From the NCBI GenBank assembly GCA_053919585.1, contig CM132796.1: a stretch of 64,000 nt of DNA; one strand, 5' to 3'. Below the pieces are notes generated by a model, which did no database searches, was not told the origin of the DNA, and worked only from the letters and a program-made list of their open reading frames with translations. Of this stretch, positions 28,090-64,000 are shown piece by piece; positions within the stretch are counted from its first letter, which is position 1; the number at the start of each line of letters is the position of its first letter. Position numbers and translations under genes: made by a program. This stretch comes from Euprymna scolopes (taxonomy: Eukaryota).

Positions 28090-28270
28090 TCGCCTTATGA
28101 CTCCACGCAGGGATTAAACATTAATTATTCCATTTTATATATATAAAAAGGAAGTTATGAAATATATGAGGCATACGCCTGACGAATTCACACGCCAATG
28201 AAACGCTGAATATTCTTTGTTGCTTAATTGACATATATATTTTCAAAAATTACTACCAAGCTCTACCTAT
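28090..28270 (+). ncRNA. Family-A hammerhead/pLTR remnant: a degenerate tandem copy at 28090-28130 and a better copy at 28174-28227
   Basis: GC-CTGACGA-ATTC..AAT-GAAACGCTGAATATTC..GTT-GCTTAA, followed by the same tatatatttt..actaccaagctctac tail as 35457-35495 (reverse). Confidence 0.6.
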
Positions 28271-28507
28271 TTATTGAGCAGAAGTAAATACTGAAAATAT
28301 ACACATGAAATTATATCTTCGTATATTAAGTTATGTGATTAAATGAAGNNNNNNNNNNNNNNNNNNNNNNNNNNNNNNNNNNNNNNNNNNNNNNNNNNNN
28401 NNNNNNNNNNNNNNNNNNNNNNNNNNNNNNNNNNNNNNNNNNNNNNNNNNNNNNNNNNNNNNNNNNNNNNNNNNNNNNNNNNNNNNNNNNNNNNNNNNNN
28501 NNNNNNA

Positions 28508-30550: not shown

Positions 30551-33500
30551 TTACAGATAATCAATATTATCTTTCATCATTTGATAGAATTTAGCAGAGG
30601 CTTTGCGTTTGGGTCTAGTCCTGAGTTGATTGGCCACCTCTTCATTACTGTTACTATTGCCTAATTGCAGTGTTTTATCATTAAGTCCTTCACTAGAATC
30701 ATTTTGGAAAGGCTTACTGATAGGTTCTTTCATTCGAGTATTACCTTGGGGACATGATATTTCCATAGGGTATAGGTTAGAAATGGAGTGATACTCTATT
30801 GCCCCATTACCTTGCTTCAGTTTAACAGCTCGTATTTTATTGTCAAACCCTATTACATTTTCTAAAACCTTGCCCAGCATCCAGAAGGATCTCCATTTAG
30901 TCGTGGATTTGATCAATACGACATCCCCTACTTTTATTCTATTTTCCCATTTATTTTGGTAAATATTCCTGCCATGTTCTCTTAAACTTAGCAAATAGCT
31001 TTCATACCATAATTTAAATTTTAATATTTCTTCTTGAAAATTTAAAGTTTTATTCAATGAGTTTGAGTAAGGTTCTTCCTGCCAAACCTCTTCCTCTTCA
31101 GATTTTAGAACTAAAGAGGAATTCCCATATATTCTCAAAAAGGAATTAGGAGTTATAATTTCAAGATTAGGAGAGCTTAATCTATAAGTTAAAGGTCTAG
31201 AATTTATAGCCAACTTAATATTTGACAATGTTGTTAAAAGTTCAAAATAGCTAAGTCTAGATCTTCCTATGACCTTGAATAGGCAACCCTTAAGAACTCT
31301 TATCAATCTCTCCCAAGCCGAACCAACCCACACAGAATATAAAGGGATTTTGATATGTCGGATATCTAATTTCTCTAGTTCTTCCTGAAACGTCTTTGAC
31401 TGTAGAGAACTTTCAAGAATACAACCTGCCTTTTAAAAGGTTTTAGCGTTATCACTGTATAAAAAGTGAGGTACAGAATACATGTTGCAACATCTCTGAA
31501 AGGCCAGCATAAAATTTCGGGTTGACATATCGGGTAACAGTTCAAAATGGACTGCCCTTATGTTAAGGCAAGTAAATATTAAAACAAACATTTTTACTGT
31601 ACTTCCACCCACTTCATTCTTTATCCACAAATGACATGTGTAGTCGATTCCCACATGATTGAAAGTTTTCACTAAATTGACATGATGCCTAGGCATATCC
31701 ACAACTTTAGGATATTTATAAGCCAAAGCATTATACTTTTTTGCAGGTTGAACAATTATTTATTTCTGCCTTTACAACAGTCAAACCTTGGGGAATCCAC
31801 ACACCTTGCTCTCGCAAATAATTTAATGTGGTACCTATTCCCATGTGTTGCACCTTAGCATGGCAATAGTTAATGAATAATGACGTAAATTTATTTCTTT
31901 TAGGCAATAACACAAGGTTATATACTTCATAGTTGAAATATAGGCATTTGCTTATCCTCCCTTGAGATCTCAAAATTCCATCAGAGTCTATGAATAAATT
32001 TAAATTTGAAACCAAAGTGGGGACATTTTTATTTCTTTTGTCCTGTGATTTCAAAAAGTCAATCTCCTTGAAGAAATGCTCACTCTGTATTAACCTTATC
32101 CAGTACATTTTTGCTTTCTTCAATGGATTAACACCATTTTTTTCTTACAAAACGGTTTGAACAATAAACTTGTTATTCTCAATAATTTCTTGTAATCAGA
32201 ATATTTTTCAATGTCCAAAATGGCAGTTTTTGTTTTAATTATTTGATTACAATTAACATTTACTGTTCCCTTATGGTCAGGTGAAATACTCATTAAAGGG
32301 TATTTAGGCCAATTTTTAAATTCGTTGGTAAGCCAACTTGGTCCTTCCAAACATAATTTTCTATTTCTTAAATATTTATCGTAAGATATTCCCCTAGTTA
32401 ACATATCAGCCGGATTTTGATCTGTATGAACATAGTGAAACATTATTGGTAGTTTAAATTCATCCTCAAGAGCTTTTATTAATCCATTTACTTCGGATAT
32501 TCTATTTTTAACAAATTTAGATTTTACTTTCTTTTGTGATTAACCAATTTAAAACTACTTGAGCATCCGCGCATATATTAATAAATTGAAACTGAATATC
32601 TTCATAAGTTTCAATTAATGTTGGAAGACATTTTAATGCCAGTATTACTCCCATTAGTTCCAAAGTAGGGACACTAAGTTCATTACCTTTCCTAAATTTA
32701 CTTATTTGCTTGTTGTCAAAGGAAATAGATTCTTGATCATTGGGTCTTATTCCCATAGATTCAAGACTAAAGGGATTTTCTAAGCCGTTGTCTACTTCAC
32801 TGTCGGATAAAATATTCTCTAAGGGATTGAAATACGATTTAAGGGGATCCATTATTAGGTTAATTACTGTTTTATTATTTTTTTTATTGGTTTTAATTGA
32901 GTGTTAAGCAAGTCATTTCTCTCGGCTGAACTGATAAAATTGAAAATGTTTCCAATAGGAGCTACCCTATCATATATGATAAAGTTATAACCACCCCCTA
33001 TCTTTTTTATGGAAAAGGAAATATATTGAATTATGTCTATCCCCATGAGCATATCTATTTCAATAGTGTCGTGTTCTTTATTTAAGTAAAAGGACTCATC
33101 AAGCAGATTTACACCCTGTAATTTTAATTTATTAATTACATCTTTCATTCCGTGCATCATGTAATTTATATTCATGCTTTCGACTACCAATAGCGGAACA
33201 AAAAAATTCTATTCTTTAATTTTACACCAGTAGACATTTGTTTAAATTTCTTAACTTGCCGTCCTAAATAACTATGTATCTCCTGCTCTGATGAGAACTC
33301 GTTATAATTTGGGGATAATGCTAGAGCAGCTTCTTTTGTTATAAAAGATATTTGGCTGCCACAATCTATTAAGCACCTAACTTGTCTTTGCTTATGACCA
33401 CATTTTAAATTTAGGGTCATAGTAGGTAACATTACAAGTGTCCATATTTTTCAAGGCGTAACACAAGTTTGTTTGAACAGCCTTTTGAGGACACAAAGTA

Positions 33501-35130: not shown

Positions 35131-35456
35131 TGTTAGAATTTTTTTTAAATTTCTAACGCGTCTCTCTTTTCTTGGTTCCTTGTAATCCGAACAACTTGGT
35201 TAATTTTGAGAAAGAATAACACAATAAAATTCTTGTATTTAAAATAACGTATATTTACAAGTTAAAGTTTCCAAAACAATTGTTCTGGAGGAGTTTCTGT
35301 TTGTTGCAGAAAAAGAGAGTAATTTCTGAGAAGTGCTCGCTGTTGATCTTTTTTTTTTTTTTTTTTTTTGCAAGCAACTCCAAGTGATAGTGGGTAATTT
35401 GCATAAGTGGCTTTATGCAAATTACCTTAAAAGTTTGAGTACAAATAATTCTAACA
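35131..35456 (-). repeat. 5' LTR of the BEL/Pao element
   Basis: Near-identical to 29984-30313. Confidence 0.95.
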
Positions 35457-35498
35457 GTAGTAGAGCTAGTTAGTAAGTTATAAAATATATATTGCGAT

Positions 35499-35551
35499 TA
35501 AGCTACACTGAATATTTCGAGTTTCATCCACTCTAGGATTCTTCAGGCTTA
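35499..35551 (-). ncRNA. Type I hammerhead ribozyme, family A (left arm)
   Basis: UAAGC-CUGAAGA-AUCC uagagu GGAU-GAAAC ucgaaauauucagu GUA-GCUUA. Confidence 0.72.
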
Positions 35552-35633
35552 TGCGCGAATTCTGTGGTTGTTTGTCGTTTTTATATACTTACGTGCGTAT
35601 ATAAAAATGACAAACAACCACAAAATTCGAGCA

Positions 35634-35686
35634 TAAGCCTGAAGAGTCCTAGACTGGATGAAACGCGGAATATTCAGGGTAGCTTA
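35634..35686 (+). ncRNA. Type I hammerhead ribozyme, family A (right arm)
   Basis: UAAGC-CUGAAGA-GUCC uagacu GGAU-GAAAC gcggaauauucagg GUA-GCUUA; predicted cleavage after 35681. Confidence 0.78.
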
Positions 35687-35775
35687 ATCGCCCTATATAT
35701 TTTACTAGCAAAAGTACCCGCCGTTGACTGGGTTCAAAAACAGCCTACAGAAAATGGACTCTGATTTATGAAAGT

Positions 35776-36344
35776 ACTAGCGGGGGTACCCGGCGTTGCC
35801 CAGGTGTTTGTAGGTGTGTGTGGTGTTAAATAAAAAAGAAACCGGGGGGTTCGGATCGAACCCGAAGCTCTGAGGCAAAGTTTGAAAATAAAATCGGCCA
35901 GCCAGAATGAGTTACTGAACCAAATTGACAGGTGCGCGGACGGAAGTCGTCGAGCGTTACGACGACGACGATGACGAGGACGTCGAGGACGACGACGACG
36001 TCAATGACCAGGTTTGTTTGTTATAGGCGAAGTAAAAAAAGAAAACAACGTTTTAATTTAGCGGGAGCGGGGGTAATCAAAACATCGAAAAAAAACACAA
36101 AAAATCTAACGCATGCGTAGAATCGGTCATTGTCACGAGGGCTGGTTTTTGTTGTCAAAAATTGTCGATTTTGGGGTGAAAAAATGAACGTTTTTGGCCA
36201 ATTTTTCGATATTTTTCGAGCAAAGGACGGCGGTTCAGTGTGATACCGAGTTTGTGAATTTTCGTCGCGTCTGTCGAAAGTTTTTAGCAGACATCCAAAC
36301 ATACACACATGCATACATACATTTTCGCTTTTATATATATAGAT
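35776..36344 (+). mobile_element. HINE-like element with an internal (ACG)n tract
   Basis: ACTAGCGGGGGTACCCGGCGTTGCCCAGG head; tail matches the reverse complement of 15073-15260. Confidence 0.72.
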
Positions 36345-37351: not shown

Positions 37352-38560
37352 TCACATCATGATTCGAACCATCATAAGCAAACGAGGCTTATATCCCGTT
37401 TGAAGAAAATGATTCGGAGTTAAAATACTAACGTTTTTGTCGGCAGAAGCAAGATAAGTGAGGAGTTTGTCATATATTGCCTTTTGCACATCAGATAGTT
37501 CAGTCAGAAATTCAAAATAATCCAACTTTCTTCTACCCAACAGTTTCCTCAAACATTGTTTGACAGTTTTAATAAGTATTTCCCAGTCCCCTCCCCCTGC
37601 CAGGCAGAGTAAAGGGGAATTGTTCGATGGACGATGTGTATGGATTTAAATTGTTCCTTCAACTCATCCGATGCGAGCACGTACGATAACAATATTCCGA
37701 TCGCAACAAAAGATTTCGCGTTATCGGAATATACATGCGTAGGGATACCAAATACATTGGTAAACCTAACAAACGCCATCATAAAAGAGCGGATGCTCAT
37801 ATCCGGCAATAATTCCAAGTGAATTGCACGCAAACTCATGCATGTAAAGAGTAATATGTACATTTTAACTTCTCCCCTCCAACTTTAATAGAAAATTGAC
37901 CGATGAAATCCACACAAATTAGTTTGAATGCGCGAACAAAGTTCACCCTATGAGCAGGCAATAATGACACTAAAGGTCCCTTACAAGGCAGAGCATTTAT
38001 TTTTTTACATACGCTGCAAGTACGCACAAGTGCTTTTACGGCTTGTCTCCCTGGAGGGATCCAAACCTGAGAGAGTGTTAACTTACTAATGATTGAATTA
38101 ACCCCCATGTGGCAACAGTTAAGATGAGCTTCCTGAATCGCCAGTTTTGTTAAATAATGACTTTTTCCTAACAAAAGGGGGAACTTGACCTCGAAGGGCA
38201 GAATGTCAGAATTCTGCATCCTGCCTCTGGTTTTAATTACCCAATCTTTATCAAGGAATAACACTAAGACAGTTACCCTAGGGGGAGGCACCTTACAGGA
38301 TGGTTGTTTCAAATAACATATTTCATGAGGGAAAGCCTCCATTTGCGTATTAGAAAATAGCAATAATTTGGCCCTATTAAAATTGTCAGCACTACGGTGA
38401 CATAACAAATCATAAAATGTCAACACTTTTTCTAAGACGCTGATTGCCTTAGATAAGCTGGAAATACCATGTAATATCTAACGCTGATTGCCTTAGATAA
38501 GCTGGAATACCACGTAATATCTAACGGGAAGGGATTTTCAGAAGGACGTGTCTCCGGAGA
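37352..38560 (-). pseudogene. pol: Fragment of a second BEL/Pao family (integrase Zn finger and catalytic core)
   Basis: AHLNCCHMGV..CSVCKK, CVDFIG, LLFTCMSLRAIHLEL, SDNAKSF; no LTRs. A 44-bp tandem duplication lies at 38437-38523. Confidence 0.9.
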
Positions 38561-39578: not shown

Positions 39579-42500
39579 TTGTAGCCATGTCACTAGTAAG
39601 GGTGCTGGAGGTAAACGTTTTATCTGGGCTGACGTTATCCGCCTGATAGTCAGGGACCCGAACCTTGGATTAACCACTAAGGAGGCTGTCCTATCAGCAG
39701 GCGCAAAGTACTGGGACTGCTTTATTGCCATTTAATGAATGGATTCTGGACCATACAGTAGTCTCTGGTGGGGCCTCTCGATGCCATACTAGTGGGTAAT
39801 TGTTACGGCTTTACCTTATCATGTGCTACAAAAAAAAATTCTTCGTTACTTTTCTCTCTTTGTTTCCCCTCTCTGTCCTGCTCTAAGCAAGTCTGATGAC
39901 CTAGTCCACAAACTCGAAAATTCCATCATGACAAGTTTCAATAAAAAATACACGATAAAACCCGGATATGAATCTTCCAACGTAGACACCCACTACTATG
40001 TCTCCTTCTCCAACATCAGAGGTCTACGTTCTAACCTTCCAGAGGTTGAAGCCCAATTACAGGAGACTAAACCAGACCTTTTATTTTTAAGCGAAATTGG
40101 AATTGGACAGACTATTTCCCTAAATGAGTTCGTAATTCAAGGATACTCTAACCTAACTTCCAAATCTGACCCCCAAGATCGCCATGGGCATGGAATATGT
40201 GCCTATATAAAAGATGGCTTTCCATGTGGTAGGGACATCTCCAGAGAAGATCCTAACTTACCCTATATGTGCTTCCGAGTAGCACTAGCTCACACTACGG
40301 CATTTATATTTACTCTCTATCGCCCCCATAACAGCGGAGTTACTATCTTTAAAATCATATCTGAGAAAATTGACCAAGTTCTATCAGCTTATCCTTCAGC
40401 TAACATTCACATATGTGGAGACTTCAATGTTCATAATGTGGAATGGTTGACCCACTCAAACAAGACCGATGATGAGGGGAGATTCTGTCATGATTTCTCC
40501 ATTGCTTATGACCTCACTCAGATTGTTACACGAAGCCACCCGTGTGCCCGACAATGACGGCCAGTATGCAAGTCTCCTAGAAATGTAATACGTCCTCAGA
40601 CGTACCTCTCCATCGTACAGTATATCGATACACTATGGCTGACTGGGATAGTTTCCGTACATTTATATCGGATCGTCCTCTGCGTTCCATGTTTAAAAAG
40701 GATGTTTCGTCTATAGTATCAGACCTGACAGAATGGTTAATTGTAGGTATAGACAATTTCATACCCTCGAAAAAGTTCCAGCAAAAACCTAACAGCCAGC
40801 CATGGTTTTCTTCAGAATGTGCTGCTGCTACTGCGCATAGAAATTACTTTTTCCACTGCTTCCAACGTAATAGATGTATGGAAACTAAAGCCGCTTTCAG
40901 GACTGCCAGCAACCATTGTAAGAAAGTAATAAAGAACGCAATGGAGTTGTATGCTTAGTCCGTCAAGTCCAAAGTAGCTGAGCAGCGGCTTGGTTCCCAC
41001 CAGTTTTGGCAAATTGCAAACAGAATCCTGAACAGAAGCGTGTGCTCTATCCCAACTATCATCAATGGATCTGAGTTACTCTCGTCAGCATCAGACAAAT
41101 CCAAACTCTTTGCCAAGAACTTTGCAGCCAATTCTACCCTTTGCGACCAAGGCCGCCAACCCCCAATATTTCCTCCTGTATCAGAAAACACACTATGTGA
41201 TATACAAATATATGTATGTGATATTGCCAAGCTAATCAAAAACCTTGATTCAAGTAAAGCAACCGGCCCTGACGGTATTCCAATTATACTACTCAAAAAA
41301 CTTCAACCAGAACTACCACCTATACTTACAAAACTGTTTAAACGTTGTCTGAAAGGAAAATTGCTTCTCATCATCCTGGAAAATCTCATCAGTATGCCAT
41401 GTATTTAAGAATTCAGGTGATCGTTCATGCCCCTCTCAGTACAGGCCAATAAGTCTCCTGTGTGTCATGAGTAAGTTGCTGGAATCTGTGTTAAATAGAG
41501 AAGTAGTCAACCATCTCAGCAAAAATAACCTTCTTAGTGACACACAATATGGTTTCCGTTCTGCTAGATCTACAGCAGATGTGCTTACAGTTATATCTCA
41601 TAGGATTAGCGAATCTCTCGACAGAGGCAACCTTTCTAGGGCAATTGCACTTGACATATCAAAGGCCTTTGATAGGGTATGCCATAAAGGTTTACTTCAC
41701 AAGATCTCCATCTATGGTATAGTTGGAAATGTCTTCTTAATTATTAAATCATTTCTCTCTGATAGGTTCATAAGAGTAGTAATTGATAGGCAAAAATCAG
41801 AAGCTCACAGTATTAATGCTGGAGTCCCTCAGGGGTCCATCCTGGGCCCAACTCTTTTCCTGATCTACATTAATGATCTTCCAAATCACATCCTTACATC
41901 ATTCGTAGACATTTTTGCTAACGACACTACCATCTATGGTCGCACATCTAAGACAGTAAACGACCAAGTTCTCTCCGATTCTCTCTCCTCTGATCTTGAT
42001 CACATTGTACAATGGGGAAAGAAGTGGCTGGTTACTTTTAATGCATCTAAAACCAAGCTTCTATTTTTACATCATCAACCTTCTGATCCCAATTTGGCAT
42101 CAATTAAAATGAATTGCTCTCGTCTTGGGGAGGCCTCAAGTTTTGACAGGCTTCTGGGCTTGATCTTTACTCCTGATCCTTAATGGAAGACATACATCAA
42201 ATCTGTTGCCAAGGCTGCTGGAAAAATGGTCGGATCCTTCTATCGATTCAGTAGATATCTCACTGCTGAGGCAATTCTCTATCTATATAAGAGCCAGATA
42301 CGTCCAAGGATGGAATACTGTTGCCACATATGGGCAGGAGCTGCTAGAAAAGACTTGTCGGCCTTGATAGGGTTCAAAATAGACTTCGTGGCCTGGTGGG
42401 AGATGTCCTTTTCTCTTCGCTGCAACCTCTACCTCACAGAAGAGATGTTGCGAGTTTGTCTCTGCTTTATCGTTATTTTCATGGAAAGTGTTCGACTGAG

Positions 42501-63634: not shown

Positions 63635-64000
63635 AACAGAAAGATANNNNNNNNNNNNNNNNNNNNNNNNNNNNNNNNNNNNNNNNNNNNNNNNNNNNNN
63701 NNNNNNNNNNNNNNNNNNNNNNNNNNNNNNNNNNNNNNNNNNNNNNNNNNNNNNNNNNNNNNNNNNNNNNNNNNNNNNNTAATAACAAGATAAGTTTTAA
63801 ATACCAATTACCTACTTAGACCAAGTCAATCAAATTACTACCACACCTTTAATGAAACAAATACCTAAACGCCGATGGTTTTTCTCCCAACACATTTTCT
63901 GCGTTACTACGTTCGCACTCAATATATTGATTTAAATTGTTTACAGTTCTTTTTCACTTACATATATTGGAAAATATCAAACTAGAGAATCCTCCAAATA

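What the first reader, a model, noticed from the sequence alone, without database searches (positions are those of the whole stretch)
35481..35704. Palindromic cassette with back-to-back TATA boxes, each pointing at a hammerhead ribozyme on its own strand
Seen: a ~220-bp palindrome. Its centre holds TTTTATATA/TATATAAAAA, and each arm carries a complete type I hammerhead (stem I UAAGC/GCUUA, CUGAAGA, 4-bp stem II, GAAA, GUA site). Comparing five copies suggests stem III derives from a self-complementary ACGCTGAATATTCAG(C/T)GT, suited to hairpin or dimeric folding. Known: HHRs occur in Penelope pLTRs and retrozymes, usually as direct tandem repeats, and inverted pLTRs are known. Inference: this is a coding-free, divergent double-pLTR unit. 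It could yield self-cleaving RNAs of both polarities or a long hairpin RNA (an siRNA source), possibly as a non-autonomous ribozyme retroelement.
Basis: partly seen in the sequence, partly recalled or inferred. Interest (0 to 1): 0.8.

Follow-up and report, generated by a model that had tools for sequence, protein, structure and literature searches.

The report
Mirror-image Penelope retrotransposon tail with hammerheads
The palindrome is real, but it is a decayed insertion scar of a Penelope-like retrotransposon: two copies of the element's ribozyme-bearing 3' end joined head to head. This shape recurs thousands of times in this mollusc genome, and nothing shows it to be a promoter-plus-ribozyme device.

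Summary
OBSERVATION CONFIRMED. Two 108-nt arms (35481-35588 and 35597-35704) are 91% complementary. Each arm carries a complete type I hammerhead core with a 5-bp stem I and a 4-bp stem II. TATATAAAAA sits next to the centre.

WHAT IT IS. This is one old copy of a roughly 345-bp non-coding repeat, built as inverted short arm, variable junction, long arm, then a roughly 170-nt tail on one side only. The repeat is nearly always embedded in (TA)n. The arm plus tail is the 3' end of a Penelope-like element with a C-terminal GIY-YIG endonuclease. That element resembles the Hydra clade: CxCX5C linker, no CCHH motif, (TA)n targets.

HOW IT FORMED. Subfamily variants are mirrored in both arms of a copy (82 observed, 23 expected). 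Junctions differ between copies and sometimes include 3'UTR bases. Both results indicate that the palindrome is made afresh at each insertion, with joining favoured at a natural ATGCGCAT palindrome. This fits reverse transcription primed from both target strands at two alternative start sites.

THIS COPY. Stem III is degraded in both arms, and a younger poly(A) retroposon has cut off the tail.

NOT SUPPORTED. There is no evidence for TATA-box promoter function, self-cleavage or siRNA production. The element is not a tandem retrozyme.

The scan had already noted similar hammerhead palindromes elsewhere in this genome.

The parts
35457..35480 (-). Remnant (about 24 nt) of the family's one-sided tail, which is about 170 nt long in intact copies. 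On the - strand it reads ..ATAACTTACT|AACTAGCTCTAC.. The rest has been lost.
   Evidence: The alignment with 15 other copies shows the tail continuing in them. The unmapped ends of RNA-seq reads just before 35460 spell the canonical tail (table 7).
35481..35588 (-). Long arm (sense on the - strand): PLE 3'-terminal segment carrying a type I hammerhead motif at 35499-35551. Predicted cleavage is after 35504 on the - strand.
   Evidence: Stem I has 5 bp and stem II 4 bp (AUCC:GGAU). Stem III is degraded: A:U, C:G, then mismatches.
35589..35596 (.). Junction between the two arms. Bases 35593-35597 (GTGCG) match native PLE 3'UTR sequence just upstream of TATATAAAAA.
   Evidence: Junctions differ in length (20-49 nt between fixed anchors) and in content among 27 copies.
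35597..35704 (+). Short arm (sense on the + strand): the same PLE 3'-terminal segment, with the hammerhead motif at 35634-35686. Predicted cleavage is after 35681. The arm ends at the no-tail terminus (..ATATATTTTAC).
   Evidence: (Hammerhead_1 at 35636-35680, 15.6 bits).
35349..35459 (-). Context, not part of the element: about 90 nt of the 3' end of a young poly(A) retroposon plus A21. It replaces the rest of the tail.
   Evidence: at least 39 other copies at 95-98% identity, all starting at query position 5-15 (most at 11-15). The T-run 35349-35369 is read.
56230..56505 (-). Older relative in the same window: an inverted arm plus tail lying at the 5' side of a 5'-truncated PLE copy.
   Evidence: (arms 56400-56505 and 59440-59545, 78% complementary).
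56563..57866 (+). Decayed PLE open reading frame: the C-terminal part of the reverse transcriptase (RT), a linker, and the GIY-YIG endonuclease.
   Evidence: related copies L080-L086 encode FDIIDFYPSI, YRDDGL, CNCRSRTLC, VYQATIF..KYYVGMT. Protein-atlas leads.
59270..59545 (+). 3'UTR and hammerhead arm of that PLE copy. It ends ..ATAACTTAGT with no tail, directly followed by (CA)n(TA)n.
   Evidence: A Tc1-like transposon (57866-59270, - strand) is inserted between the endonuclease region and this 3'UTR.
28150..28340 (+). Solo older arm plus tail of the same superfamily. Its core is mutated (CUGACGA is kept, but stems I and III are broken).

Best explanation
The cassette is a dead insertion product of a Penelope-like retrotransposon (PLE) of the Hydra-like type, which has a C-terminal GIY-YIG endonuclease. 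Only the last 110-280 nt of the element's RNA were copied. That segment is a piece of 3'UTR containing a type I hammerhead, followed by two alternative reverse-transcription start sites.

The segment was copied twice, once from each strand of the cut target. One cDNA started at the proximal site (terminus ..ATAACTTACT). The other started about 170 nt further downstream (terminus ..AAGTAGTTAT), which produces the one-sided tail. The two cDNAs were then joined head to head, preferentially at a natural 8-nt palindrome (ATGCGCAT) that lies just upstream of TATATAAAAA in the 3'UTR. The result is a palindrome whose centre looks like two divergent TATA boxes, with a hammerhead on each strand pointing outward.

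SHOWN HERE
- The architecture and the recurrence of the element.
- Its continuity with a PLE open reading frame.
- The mirrored variants in the two arms.
- The variable junctions between copies.
- The microsatellite targets.

INFERRED
- Priming from both strands and the two start sites, by analogy with the in vitro behaviour of the Anolis PLE.
- A role for the 8-nt palindrome in joining.

This particular copy has since decayed. Its arms are 9% diverged, both stem IIIs are broken, and a later retroposon removed most of the tail. It is unlikely to do anything now.
For: 1. RECURRENCE. At least 40 full-length palindromic copies at 79-92% identity lie on many chromosomes, and the first-look search gave 3109 candidates.

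2. FIXED ASYMMETRIC ARCHITECTURE. Of the 36 fetched copies, 34 align over at least about 335 nt of the 395-nt reference, that is, through the tail. The other two are the window copy, whose tail is cut, and one short copy. Of the 34 copies with both termini found, about 30 have (TA)n or another AT-rich microsatellite on both flanks.

3. LINK TO A PLE.
- In locus L084 a decayed RT, linker and GIY-YIG reading frame runs through a 3'UTR straight into ..CAATAGAAGGTGCG|TATATAAAAACGAC. From there, 217 nt of arm (with its hammerhead) and tail are 95% identical to the mini-element reference.
- The 271 nt of 3'UTR has at least 40 copies at 88-92% identity, the same age class as the mini-elements.
- Whole-genome exact counts give 2226 arm inner 24-mers, 1045 of them preceded by native 3'UTR.
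- The window itself holds an older copy with the same layout at 56230-59555.

4. HYDRA-LIKE FEATURES. The endonuclease is C-terminal. CNCRSRTLC matches CxCX5C. There are no cysteines between the GIY and YIG motifs. CRLC lies next to LNE. A canonical hammerhead is present. The targets are (TA)n. These come and are compared with the clade definition in PMC8557442, section 11.

5. MADE AFRESH AT EACH INSERTION.
- The majority sequences of the two arms are identical at 103 of 103 positions.
- The same minority variant sits in both arms of one copy 82 times, against 22.9 expected.
- Arm-to-arm identity within a copy is 0.925, against 0.887-0.891 between copies.
- Junctions differ between copies, and up to about 30 nt of 3'UTR appear on one side or the other.

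6. HEAD-TO-HEAD IS THE RULE. On contig C1, 80 exact arms include 11 pairs in (-,+) order. Their gaps are -4, 4, 4, 12, 30, 49, 51, 262, 715, 848 and 1663 nt. No tandem or tail-to-tail pair lies within 2 kb.

7. LITERATURE.
- PLE insertions often carry an inverted 5'-truncated copy at the 5' end and a tail at one end only (PMC8557442).
- A purified PLE protein cleaves and extends both DNA strands and starts reverse transcription at two internal RNA sites. The tail is the sequence between those sites (PMC11167929).
Against: - The window copy is not flanked by (TA)n, and no target-site duplication can be read.
- Every partner PLE copy I could inspect is decayed, so no intact mobiliser was shown.
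- Pfam barely detects the old reading frame: GIY-YIG scores 16.1 bits (E 0.014), below the cut-off, and there is no RVT_1 hit. BLASTP against the genome's young PLE is weak. The RT and endonuclease assignments therefore rest on motifs read by eye and on protein-atlas leads.
- The tail here is about 170 nt, against 30-40 nt in described PLEs.
- Priming from both strands has been shown only in vitro, and for a different clade (Poseidon).
- The 36 copies were retrieved with this palindrome as the query, so the constancy of the junction position in that sample is partly a selection effect. Only 6 loci carry the perfect 28-nt junction.
- Rfam models do not reach their gathering scores for the hammerhead.
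Confidence: 0.7

Rival explanations
1. The roughly 345-bp palindromic unit is a self-propagating, non-autonomous element, a parasite of the PLE. Each arm would be transcribed from the centre by an internal or opposite-arm promoter. The RNA would carry the reverse-transcription start sites, would be mobilised in trans by PLE protein, and the palindrome would be regenerated at every cycle.
For: Seven of 11 head-to-head pairs on contig C1 have their junction within about 50 nt of the arm start. That is far more than uniform 5' truncation of a 2-3 kb element would give. The mirrored variants and variable junctions fit this model as well as the by-product model. Family-level RNA is abundant, about 1000x per strand in 6% of each run, against 0-3x over the neighbouring young retroposon. 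Penelope is reported to have an internal promoter downstream of its transcription start site (cited in PMC8557442). Non-autonomous relatives derived from PLE pseudo-LTRs are known (preprint 10.64898/2026.07.22.740005).
Against: No read starts were detected at the centre or downstream of the TATA motifs, and read depth is lowest at the centre. Several junctions contain 3'UTR bases that a centre-initiated RNA would not carry. The subfamily variants of the mini-elements also occur in a PLE-attached arm (L084), so PLE RNA alone suffices as the template. A natural palindromic octamer explains the hot spot without requiring a transcription start site.
Confidence: 0.2
2. The cassette is a functional host or element device. 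Divergent TATA promoters would drive self-cleaving RNAs of both polarities, or read-through would give a 108-bp hairpin that feeds an siRNA or piRNA pathway.
For: TATAAAAA motifs lie 36 nt upstream of each hammerhead's stem I. The whole palindrome folds into a -151.8 kcal/mol hairpin, and it draws generic long-hairpin miRNA-model matches. Reads with opposite-strand joints occur in RNA-seq (table 5).
Against: All the miRNA matches are far below gathering scores (for example 77.9 against 119), and any long inverted repeat would produce them. The TATA motifs are native 3'UTR sequence mirrored by the junction. This copy's hammerheads are degraded. Copies decay neutrally: 18 of 68 arms have lost a core box. 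No small-RNA data could be examined.
Confidence: 0.06
3. The cassette is a DNA-level structure: a foldback or MITE-type DNA transposon that targets TA, or a local inverted duplication or assembly artefact.
For: The flanks are TA-rich, as with Tc1/mariner-derived MITEs. A Tc1-like transposase lies between the older arm pair at 56400-59545.
Against: The element's termini are not inverted repeats. They resemble each other in direct orientation (AGTAAGTTAT.. and ..AAGTAGTTAT). The inverted repeat is internal and asymmetric. Eleven other copies of the Tc1-like element carry no hammerhead arm, and the window's Tc1 copy is an independent, truncated insertion. Dozens of dispersed copies rule out an artefact or a one-off event.
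Confidence: 0.03

Closest known systems
Hydra-clade Penelope-like elements (Craig, Yushenova, Rodriguez & Arkhipova 2021, PMC8557442)
   Same: [quoted passage not shown] They have no CCHH motif, a CxCX5C linker and a CxxC near the conserved E/N residues. They carry a canonical hammerhead and nearly always insert into (TA)n. They were reported from aquatic invertebrates, including Mollusca.
   Different: Clade membership was not tested here by phylogeny. The DKT and RWK motifs were not located. All copies seen are decayed. The tail is about 170 nt rather than 30-40 nt.
Complex PLE insertions: pseudo-LTRs with an inverted 5'-truncated copy and a one-sided tail (Evgen'ev & Arkhipova 2005 and Arkhipova 2006, as summarised in PMC8557442)
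   Same: An inverted 5'-truncated copy abuts the 5' end of the direct copy. The hammerhead lies in the repeated terminal region. The tail is present at only one end. The targets are microsatellites.
   Different: Here both copies are truncated to about 110 nt at nearly the same point, so the whole insertion is a coding-free palindrome of about 345 bp. The truncation point clusters at a natural 8-nt palindrome.
In vitro mechanism of the Anolis Poseidon PLE (Frangieh et al. 2024, PMC11167929)
   Same: Both target strands are cleaved and extended. Reverse transcription starts at two internal RNA sites a short distance downstream of the hammerhead, and the tail is the sequence between them. The target is AT-rich. 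This would produce exactly the head-to-head arms with one tailed end that are seen here.
   Different: A different clade and host. Nothing here was tested biochemically. In that system the hammerhead was not needed for insertion, so its role here also remains open.
Metazoan non-LTR retrozymes (Cervera & de la Pena 2020, PMC7229834; Li, Clavereau & Pollet 2026 preprint)
   Same: Short, AT-rich, non-coding repeats with type I hammerheads. They are related to PLE pseudo-LTRs and abundant in molluscs.
   Different: Retrozymes are direct tandem repeats, whose two flanking ribozymes excise a monomer that circularises. Here the two hammerheads lie on opposite strands, so any transcript carries only one sense ribozyme. 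No tandem pairs were found among 80 arms.

Membership tests
Hammerhead ribozyme, type I | Conserved catalytic core: C3-U4-G5-A6-N7-G8-A9, G12-A13-A14, the A15.1:U16.1 pair, and H17 not G | tested here: met
   Both arms read CUGAAGA ... GAAA ... U-A. In the family, 50 of 68 arms keep all boxes in register.
Hammerhead ribozyme, type I | Three helices around the core, with helix I open | tested here: inconclusive
   In the window copy stem I has 5 bp, stem II 4 bp and stem III only 2 contiguous pairs followed by mismatches. Typical family members show 5/4/6-of-7. The hammerhead fold is not the predicted minimum-energy fold: -14.3 against -17.5 kcal/mol for the majority type, and -6.9 against -14.8 for the window + arm.
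Hammerhead ribozyme, type I | Score at or above the Rfam gathering threshold (RF00163 or clan CL00010) | tested here: not met
   No hit at gathering threshold. Hammerhead_1 scores 15.6 against 34 bits. Hammerhead_3 scores 19.7 against 48.5 bits on an intact copy.
Hammerhead ribozyme, type I | Self-cleavage 3' of H17 | not testable with these tools
   RNA-seq showed no accumulation of read ends at 35681/35682. However, the reads are family-level, and the equal first-mate counts on both strands suggest an unstranded library.
Penelope-like element terminal region (Hydra-like clade) | Sequence continuity with a reading frame encoding RT followed by a C-terminal GIY-YIG endonuclease | tested here: met
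   On the L084 - strand the order is RT pieces, endonuclease, 3'UTR, arm and tail. The window region 56563-59545 has the same order. Domain calls rest on motifs, a sub-threshold Pfam GIY-YIG hit and protein-atlas leads.
Penelope-like element terminal region (Hydra-like clade) | Endonuclease without the CCHH motif, and a linker Zn-finger modified to CxCX5C | tested here: met
   CNCRSRTLC, then VYQATIF..KYYVGMT with no Cys between the GIY and YIG motifs. For contrast, the genome's young PLE (L065) has GIYSILCLDCGRIYVGET.
Penelope-like element terminal region (Hydra-like clade) | Insertion into (TA)n microsatellites | tested here: met
   Of the 34 copies with both termini found, about 30 have (TA)n or another AT-rich microsatellite on both flanks. 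The window copy itself does not.
Penelope-like element terminal region (Hydra-like clade) | Inverted 5'-truncated copy at the 5' side, and a tail at one end only | tested here: met
   In the aligned copies exactly one end is tailed. The older PLE copy in the window has the tail on the inverted arm only.
Penelope-like element terminal region (Hydra-like clade) | Placement within the Hydra clade in an RT/endonuclease phylogeny | not tested
Metazoan non-LTR retrozyme | Direct tandem repeats, each monomer with a sense hammerhead, so that a monomer can be excised | tested here: not met
   Among 80 exact arms on contig C1 there are no same-strand pairs within 2 kb, against 11 head-to-head pairs. The window has no tandem copy.
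MITE / foldback DNA transposon | Terminal inverted repeats at the element's ends, flanked by a target-site duplication | tested here: not met
   The ends are AGTAAKTTATAAAAT.. and ..AAATTAAGTAGTTAT, which are similar in direct rather than inverted orientation. The inverted repeat is internal. A target-site duplication cannot be read within (TA)n.
TATA-box (RNA polymerase II) core promoter | TATAAA-type box with transcripts starting about 25-35 nt downstream | tested here: inconclusive
   The motif is present. No start cluster was reported near 35625-35640 (+) or 35545-35560 (-) in three RNA-seq runs, but depth near the centre is only about 10-90. The motif is native 3'UTR sequence in 1045 or more arms.

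The most novel reading that the evidence does not exclude
These head-to-head hammerhead mini-insertions may be the in vivo footprint of PLE reverse transcription primed from both target strands. Their features are one tailed and one untailed end, arms copied from one template, and junctions clustering at an 8-nt palindrome. They may also have become a self-propagating, non-autonomous family in a mollusc, with each arm transcribed outward from the junction. If so, the family would be a natural system, numbering very roughly 10,000 arms, for working out how PLEs build their inverted pseudo-LTRs and what the hammerhead does.
Probability: 0.2. Interest if true: 0.6.

Novelty: new member of a known kind. 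Interest (0 to 1): 0.38.

Why it matters
For genome annotation, hammerhead palindromes of this kind, of which this genome holds very many, should be masked as insertion products of Penelope-like elements. They should not be called ribozyme genes, miRNA hairpins or promoters.

For transposon biology, the family offers genome-scale evidence on how these elements integrate. It has one tailed end, mirrored variants, variable junctions and a palindromic hot spot. These features match the two-strand, two-start-site mechanism so far seen only in vitro with a lizard element. The family also extends Hydra-like PLEs, with a classical long-stem-III hammerhead, to a large mollusc genome.

Tried and rejected
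- RFAM AT GATHERING THRESHOLD. No hammerhead was found; the only hit in the window is a 5S-like sequence. In E-value mode the region draws many plant and animal miRNA models, all far below threshold. These are generic long-hairpin matches and I rejected them.
- MY FIRST STRICT DESCRIPTOR. It required at least 3-4 bp in stem III and found nothing, because this copy's stem III is broken.
- ARMS AS TERMINAL REPEATS OF THE TC1-LIKE TRANSPOSON AT 57866-59270. Rejected. Eleven other copies of that transposon have their own terminal repeats of about 215 nt and no hammerhead arm.
- THE GENOME'S ABUNDANT YOUNG PLE AS MOBILISER. This family has reading frames of up to about 806-870 aa and a canonical CCHH endonuclease. 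It shows no sequence similarity to the cassette.
- NAIAD-TYPE ASSIGNMENT OF 56400-59555 (first-stage note). Rejected, because the endonuclease follows the RT.
- PFAM AND BLASTP ON THE OLD PLE FRAGMENTS. Both were nearly uninformative.
- RNA-SEQ. Of the reads laid on the stretch, 99% come from other copies and the libraries look unstranded. The data therefore cannot show a transcription start site, cleavage, or expression of this locus.
A full census of junction positions was therefore not possible.
- MAJORITY-RULE LINE. I printed one for the non-coding 345-bp repeat, only to compare the two arms column by column.

Full report

The window region 35481-35704 is an inverted repeat of two 108-nt arms. 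They are 91% complementary and 8 nt apart. Reading the sequence, each arm in its own sense runs as follows: TATATAAAAA, about 26 nt, then UAAGC, CUGAAGA, a 4-bp stem II with a 6-nt loop, GAAA, a partly self-complementary stem III built around GAAUAUUC, GUA, and GCUUA.

An RNAMotif-style descriptor that I wrote finds exactly these two sites in the 64 kb: 35634-35686 on + and 35499-35551 on -. Composition-matched random sequence gives 0.06 per window.

Rfam does not confirm the motif at curated thresholds. Hammerhead_1 scores 15.6 bits against a gathering score of 34. On a better-preserved relative, Hammerhead_3 scores 19.7 against 48.5. Nothing appears at gathering level.

In this copy stem III has two mismatches in each arm. 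The hammerhead fold is predicted to be about 8 kcal/mol worse than the best fold. As one RNA, the whole palindrome would form a -151.8 kcal/mol hairpin.

2. IT IS ONE COPY OF AN ABUNDANT, ASYMMETRIC REPEAT

A search of the window's own 5.9-Gb genome returned at least 40 full-length palindromic matches at 79-92% identity on many chromosomes. The first-look search gave 3109 candidates.

Alignment with flanks shows that the repeat is larger than the finding. On one side only, the arm continues past ..ATAACTTACT for about 170 nt and ends at ..AAATTAAGTAGTTAT. On the other side the arm stops at ..ATAACTTACT. Of the 36 copies fetched, 34 align over at least about 335 nt of the 395-nt reference and so include the tail. 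The exceptions are the window copy and one short copy. About 30 of the 34 copies with both termini found have (TA)n or another AT-rich microsatellite on both flanks.

The window copy is atypical. Its tail stops after about 24 nt (35457-35480) and is replaced by about 90 nt plus A21 of a much younger poly(A) retroposon, which has copies at 95-98% identity. Its other end is not in (TA)n.

3. THE ARMS ARE THE 3' END OF A PENELOPE-LIKE ELEMENT (PLE)

The window's second arm pair (56400-56505 on - and 59440-59545 on +, 78% complementary) encloses 2.9 kb. Part of that (57866-59270, - strand) is a truncated Tc1-like DNA transposon. Its other copies carry their own terminal repeats and no hammerhead arm, so it is an unrelated nested insertion.

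The remainder is an old repeat. Better-preserved copies (L080-L086) encode, in order:
- reverse-transcriptase motifs (FDIIDFYPSI, YRDDGL);
- a linker;
- CNCRSRTLC;
- a GIY-YIG domain, VYQATIF..KYYVGMT.

Pfam sees only a sub-threshold GIY-YIG match. The protein atlas places the two pieces next to HTH_animal/RVT_1(/GIY-YIG) clusters and GIY-YIG clusters respectively. I treat those placements as leads.

The reading frame lies on the window's + strand. The + arm at 59440-59545 is therefore the element's own 3' end, without a tail and abutting a microsatellite. The - arm plus tail at 56230-56505 is an inverted copy at the 5' side of a 5'-truncated element.

In locus L084 the link to the younger subfamily is direct. 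The endonuclease frame runs through a 3'UTR into ..CAATAGAAGGTGCG|TATATAAAAACGAC. From there, 217 nt of arm (with its hammerhead) and tail are 95% identical to the mini-element reference. That 3'UTR has at least 40 copies at 88-92% identity.

Genome-wide, the arm's inner 24-mer occurs exactly 2226 times, and 1045 of these are preceded by native 3'UTR sequence.

The protein features, the hammerhead and the (TA)n targets match the published definition of the Hydra clade of PLEs. That definition is a C-terminal endonuclease, no CCHH motif, a CxCX5C linker and a CxxC near E/N, and the clade was reported from molluscs among other hosts (PMC8557442). The features do not fit Naiads, which have an N-terminal endonuclease and lack canonical hammerheads.

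4. THE PALINDROME IS REBUILT AT EACH INSERTION

The majority sequences of the two arms are identical at all 103 compared positions. Minority (subfamily) variants are mirrored: the same variant sits in both arms of a copy 82 times, against 22.9 expected if the arms were independent. Arm-to-arm identity is 0.925 within a copy and 0.887-0.891 between copies.

The junctions differ from copy to copy. Several contain up to about 30 nt of native 3'UTR on one side or the other.

The native sequence just upstream of the arm is ..GAAGATGCGCATATAAAAACG... ATGCGCAT is its own reverse complement, and the simplest junction is the perfect palindrome TTTTTATATGCGCATATAAAAA. That exact junction, as a 28-nt pattern, occurs at only 6 loci.

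On contig C1, 80 exact arms include 11 pairs in (-,+) order. Seven of the pairs have gaps of 51 nt or less, and the other four have gaps of 262-1663 nt. No tandem or tail-to-tail pair lies within 2 kb. Head-to-head pairing therefore looks general, and the junction is variable but strongly biased to this spot.

5. MECHANISM (INFERRED)

Published work describes PLE insertions with an inverted 5'-truncated copy at the 5' end and a tail at one end only (PMC8557442). It also shows that a purified PLE protein cleaves and extends both DNA strands and starts reverse transcription at two internal RNA sites downstream of the hammerhead. The tail is the sequence between those sites (PMC11167929).

Applied here, one strand primes at the proximal site (..ACUUACU) and the other at the distal site (..AGUAGUUAU). 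Both cDNAs run towards the RNA's 5' end and are joined where a self-complementary stretch lets them pair.

This accounts for five features: the outward-pointing hammerheads, the single tail, the mirrored variants, the variable junctions and the microsatellite flanks. On this reading the 'divergent TATA boxes' are simply 3'UTR sequence reflected at the junction.

6. WHAT REMAINS OPEN

RNA-seq from three bulk libraries shows many family-level reads in both orientations. Depth is about 1000x at the outer arm and about 10x at the centre. However, 99% of the reads come from other copies, and no read starts mark the hammerhead site or a position downstream of the TATA motif. Promoter activity, cleavage and small-RNA production are therefore untested.

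A self-propagating, non-autonomous family is not excluded. The clustering of junctions would fit it. I give this reading 0.2.

Among the 68 arms sampled, 50 keep all core boxes and 46 keep workable helices. This is what neutral decay from a functional ancestor would give.

7. COMPARISON AND VERDICT

The element works like, and by the tested criteria belongs to, the terminal region of a Hydra-like PLE inserted in the known complex inverted form.

It is not a retrozyme, because there are no tandem copies. It is not a MITE, because it has no terminal inverted repeats. It does not pass Rfam thresholds either as a hammerhead or as a miRNA.

Earlier notes of this scan had already flagged hammerhead palindromes in other windows of this genome, and one follow-up read them as Penelope-type insertion scars. 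My results agree and add three things: the link to a PLE reading frame, the clade assignment, and the evidence for rebuilding at each insertion.

The finding is a new member of a known kind. The window copy itself is a decayed relic, and the family is a useful natural record of PLE integration.

Noticed in passing
window 63469-63646: A second, unrelated head-to-head hammerhead palindrome, abutting an N gap. Its ribozyme is the minimal PLE type, with a 2-bp stem III (GAAAC AAUAAU GUA) and a long stem II. The junction lies only about 10 nt upstream of stem I.
   Followed up: partly
window 57866-59270 (- strand): Truncated Tc1-like DNA transposon. The transposase begins MVKTEEHSENLRKRV.. and has frameshifts and stops, and the 3' terminal repeat is missing. 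The family has at least 40 copies at 83-88% identity, each with terminal repeats of about 215 nt.
   Followed up: yes
window 35349-35459 (- strand): The 3' fragment of a young poly(A) retroposon. It has at least 39 other copies at 95-98% identity, most starting at the same point, and it contains a small hairpin (GGTAATTTGCATAA..TTATGCAAATTACC). RNA-seq coverage is almost nil.
   Followed up: partly
window 35707-35837: Another repeat immediately right of the cassette, with two similar units (..GTACCCGCCGTTGAC.. and ..GTACCCGGCGTTGCC..). Bases 35775-35816 reach about 1000x per strand in RNA-seq. The flanking read ends are T-rich on one side and G/A-rich on the other.
   Followed up: no
G000 C12:14496712-14504984 and many other places; locus L065: A different, much younger PLE family with open frames up to about 806-870 aa and a canonical CCHH GIY-YIG endonuclease. 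It is often found as inverted or tandem clusters a few kb apart, and the first-look search gave 15396 GIY-YIG candidates. It has no sequence similarity to the cassette.
   Followed up: partly
L084:717-905 (- strand): A rearranged companion insertion: an inverted tail fused directly to an arm that starts at the hammerhead's stem I (..GTAGAGC|ATAAACCTGAG..). The fusion point therefore lies upstream of the ribozyme core, not at the cleavage site.
   Followed up: no
G000 C1:67357285-67357601: Two palindromic junctions of this family, each with a 4-nt gap between the inner 24-mers (which would fit a GCGC centre, not read), only 265 nt apart. This suggests a tandem pair of mini-palindromes.
   Followed up: no
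window 7234-7350 (- strand): The only Rfam hit at gathering level in the window: a 5S rRNA-like sequence at 40.8 bits (threshold 38) with several non-canonical pairs. It is probably a 5S-derived repeat or pseudogene.
   Followed up: no
window 30551-31333, 37836-38426, 39823-42183, 50762-51670: Other retroelement debris around the cassette: DUF5641 and integrase zinc-finger fragments, an endonuclease-plus-RT (LINE-type) pair, and a further RT fragment.
   Followed up: partly
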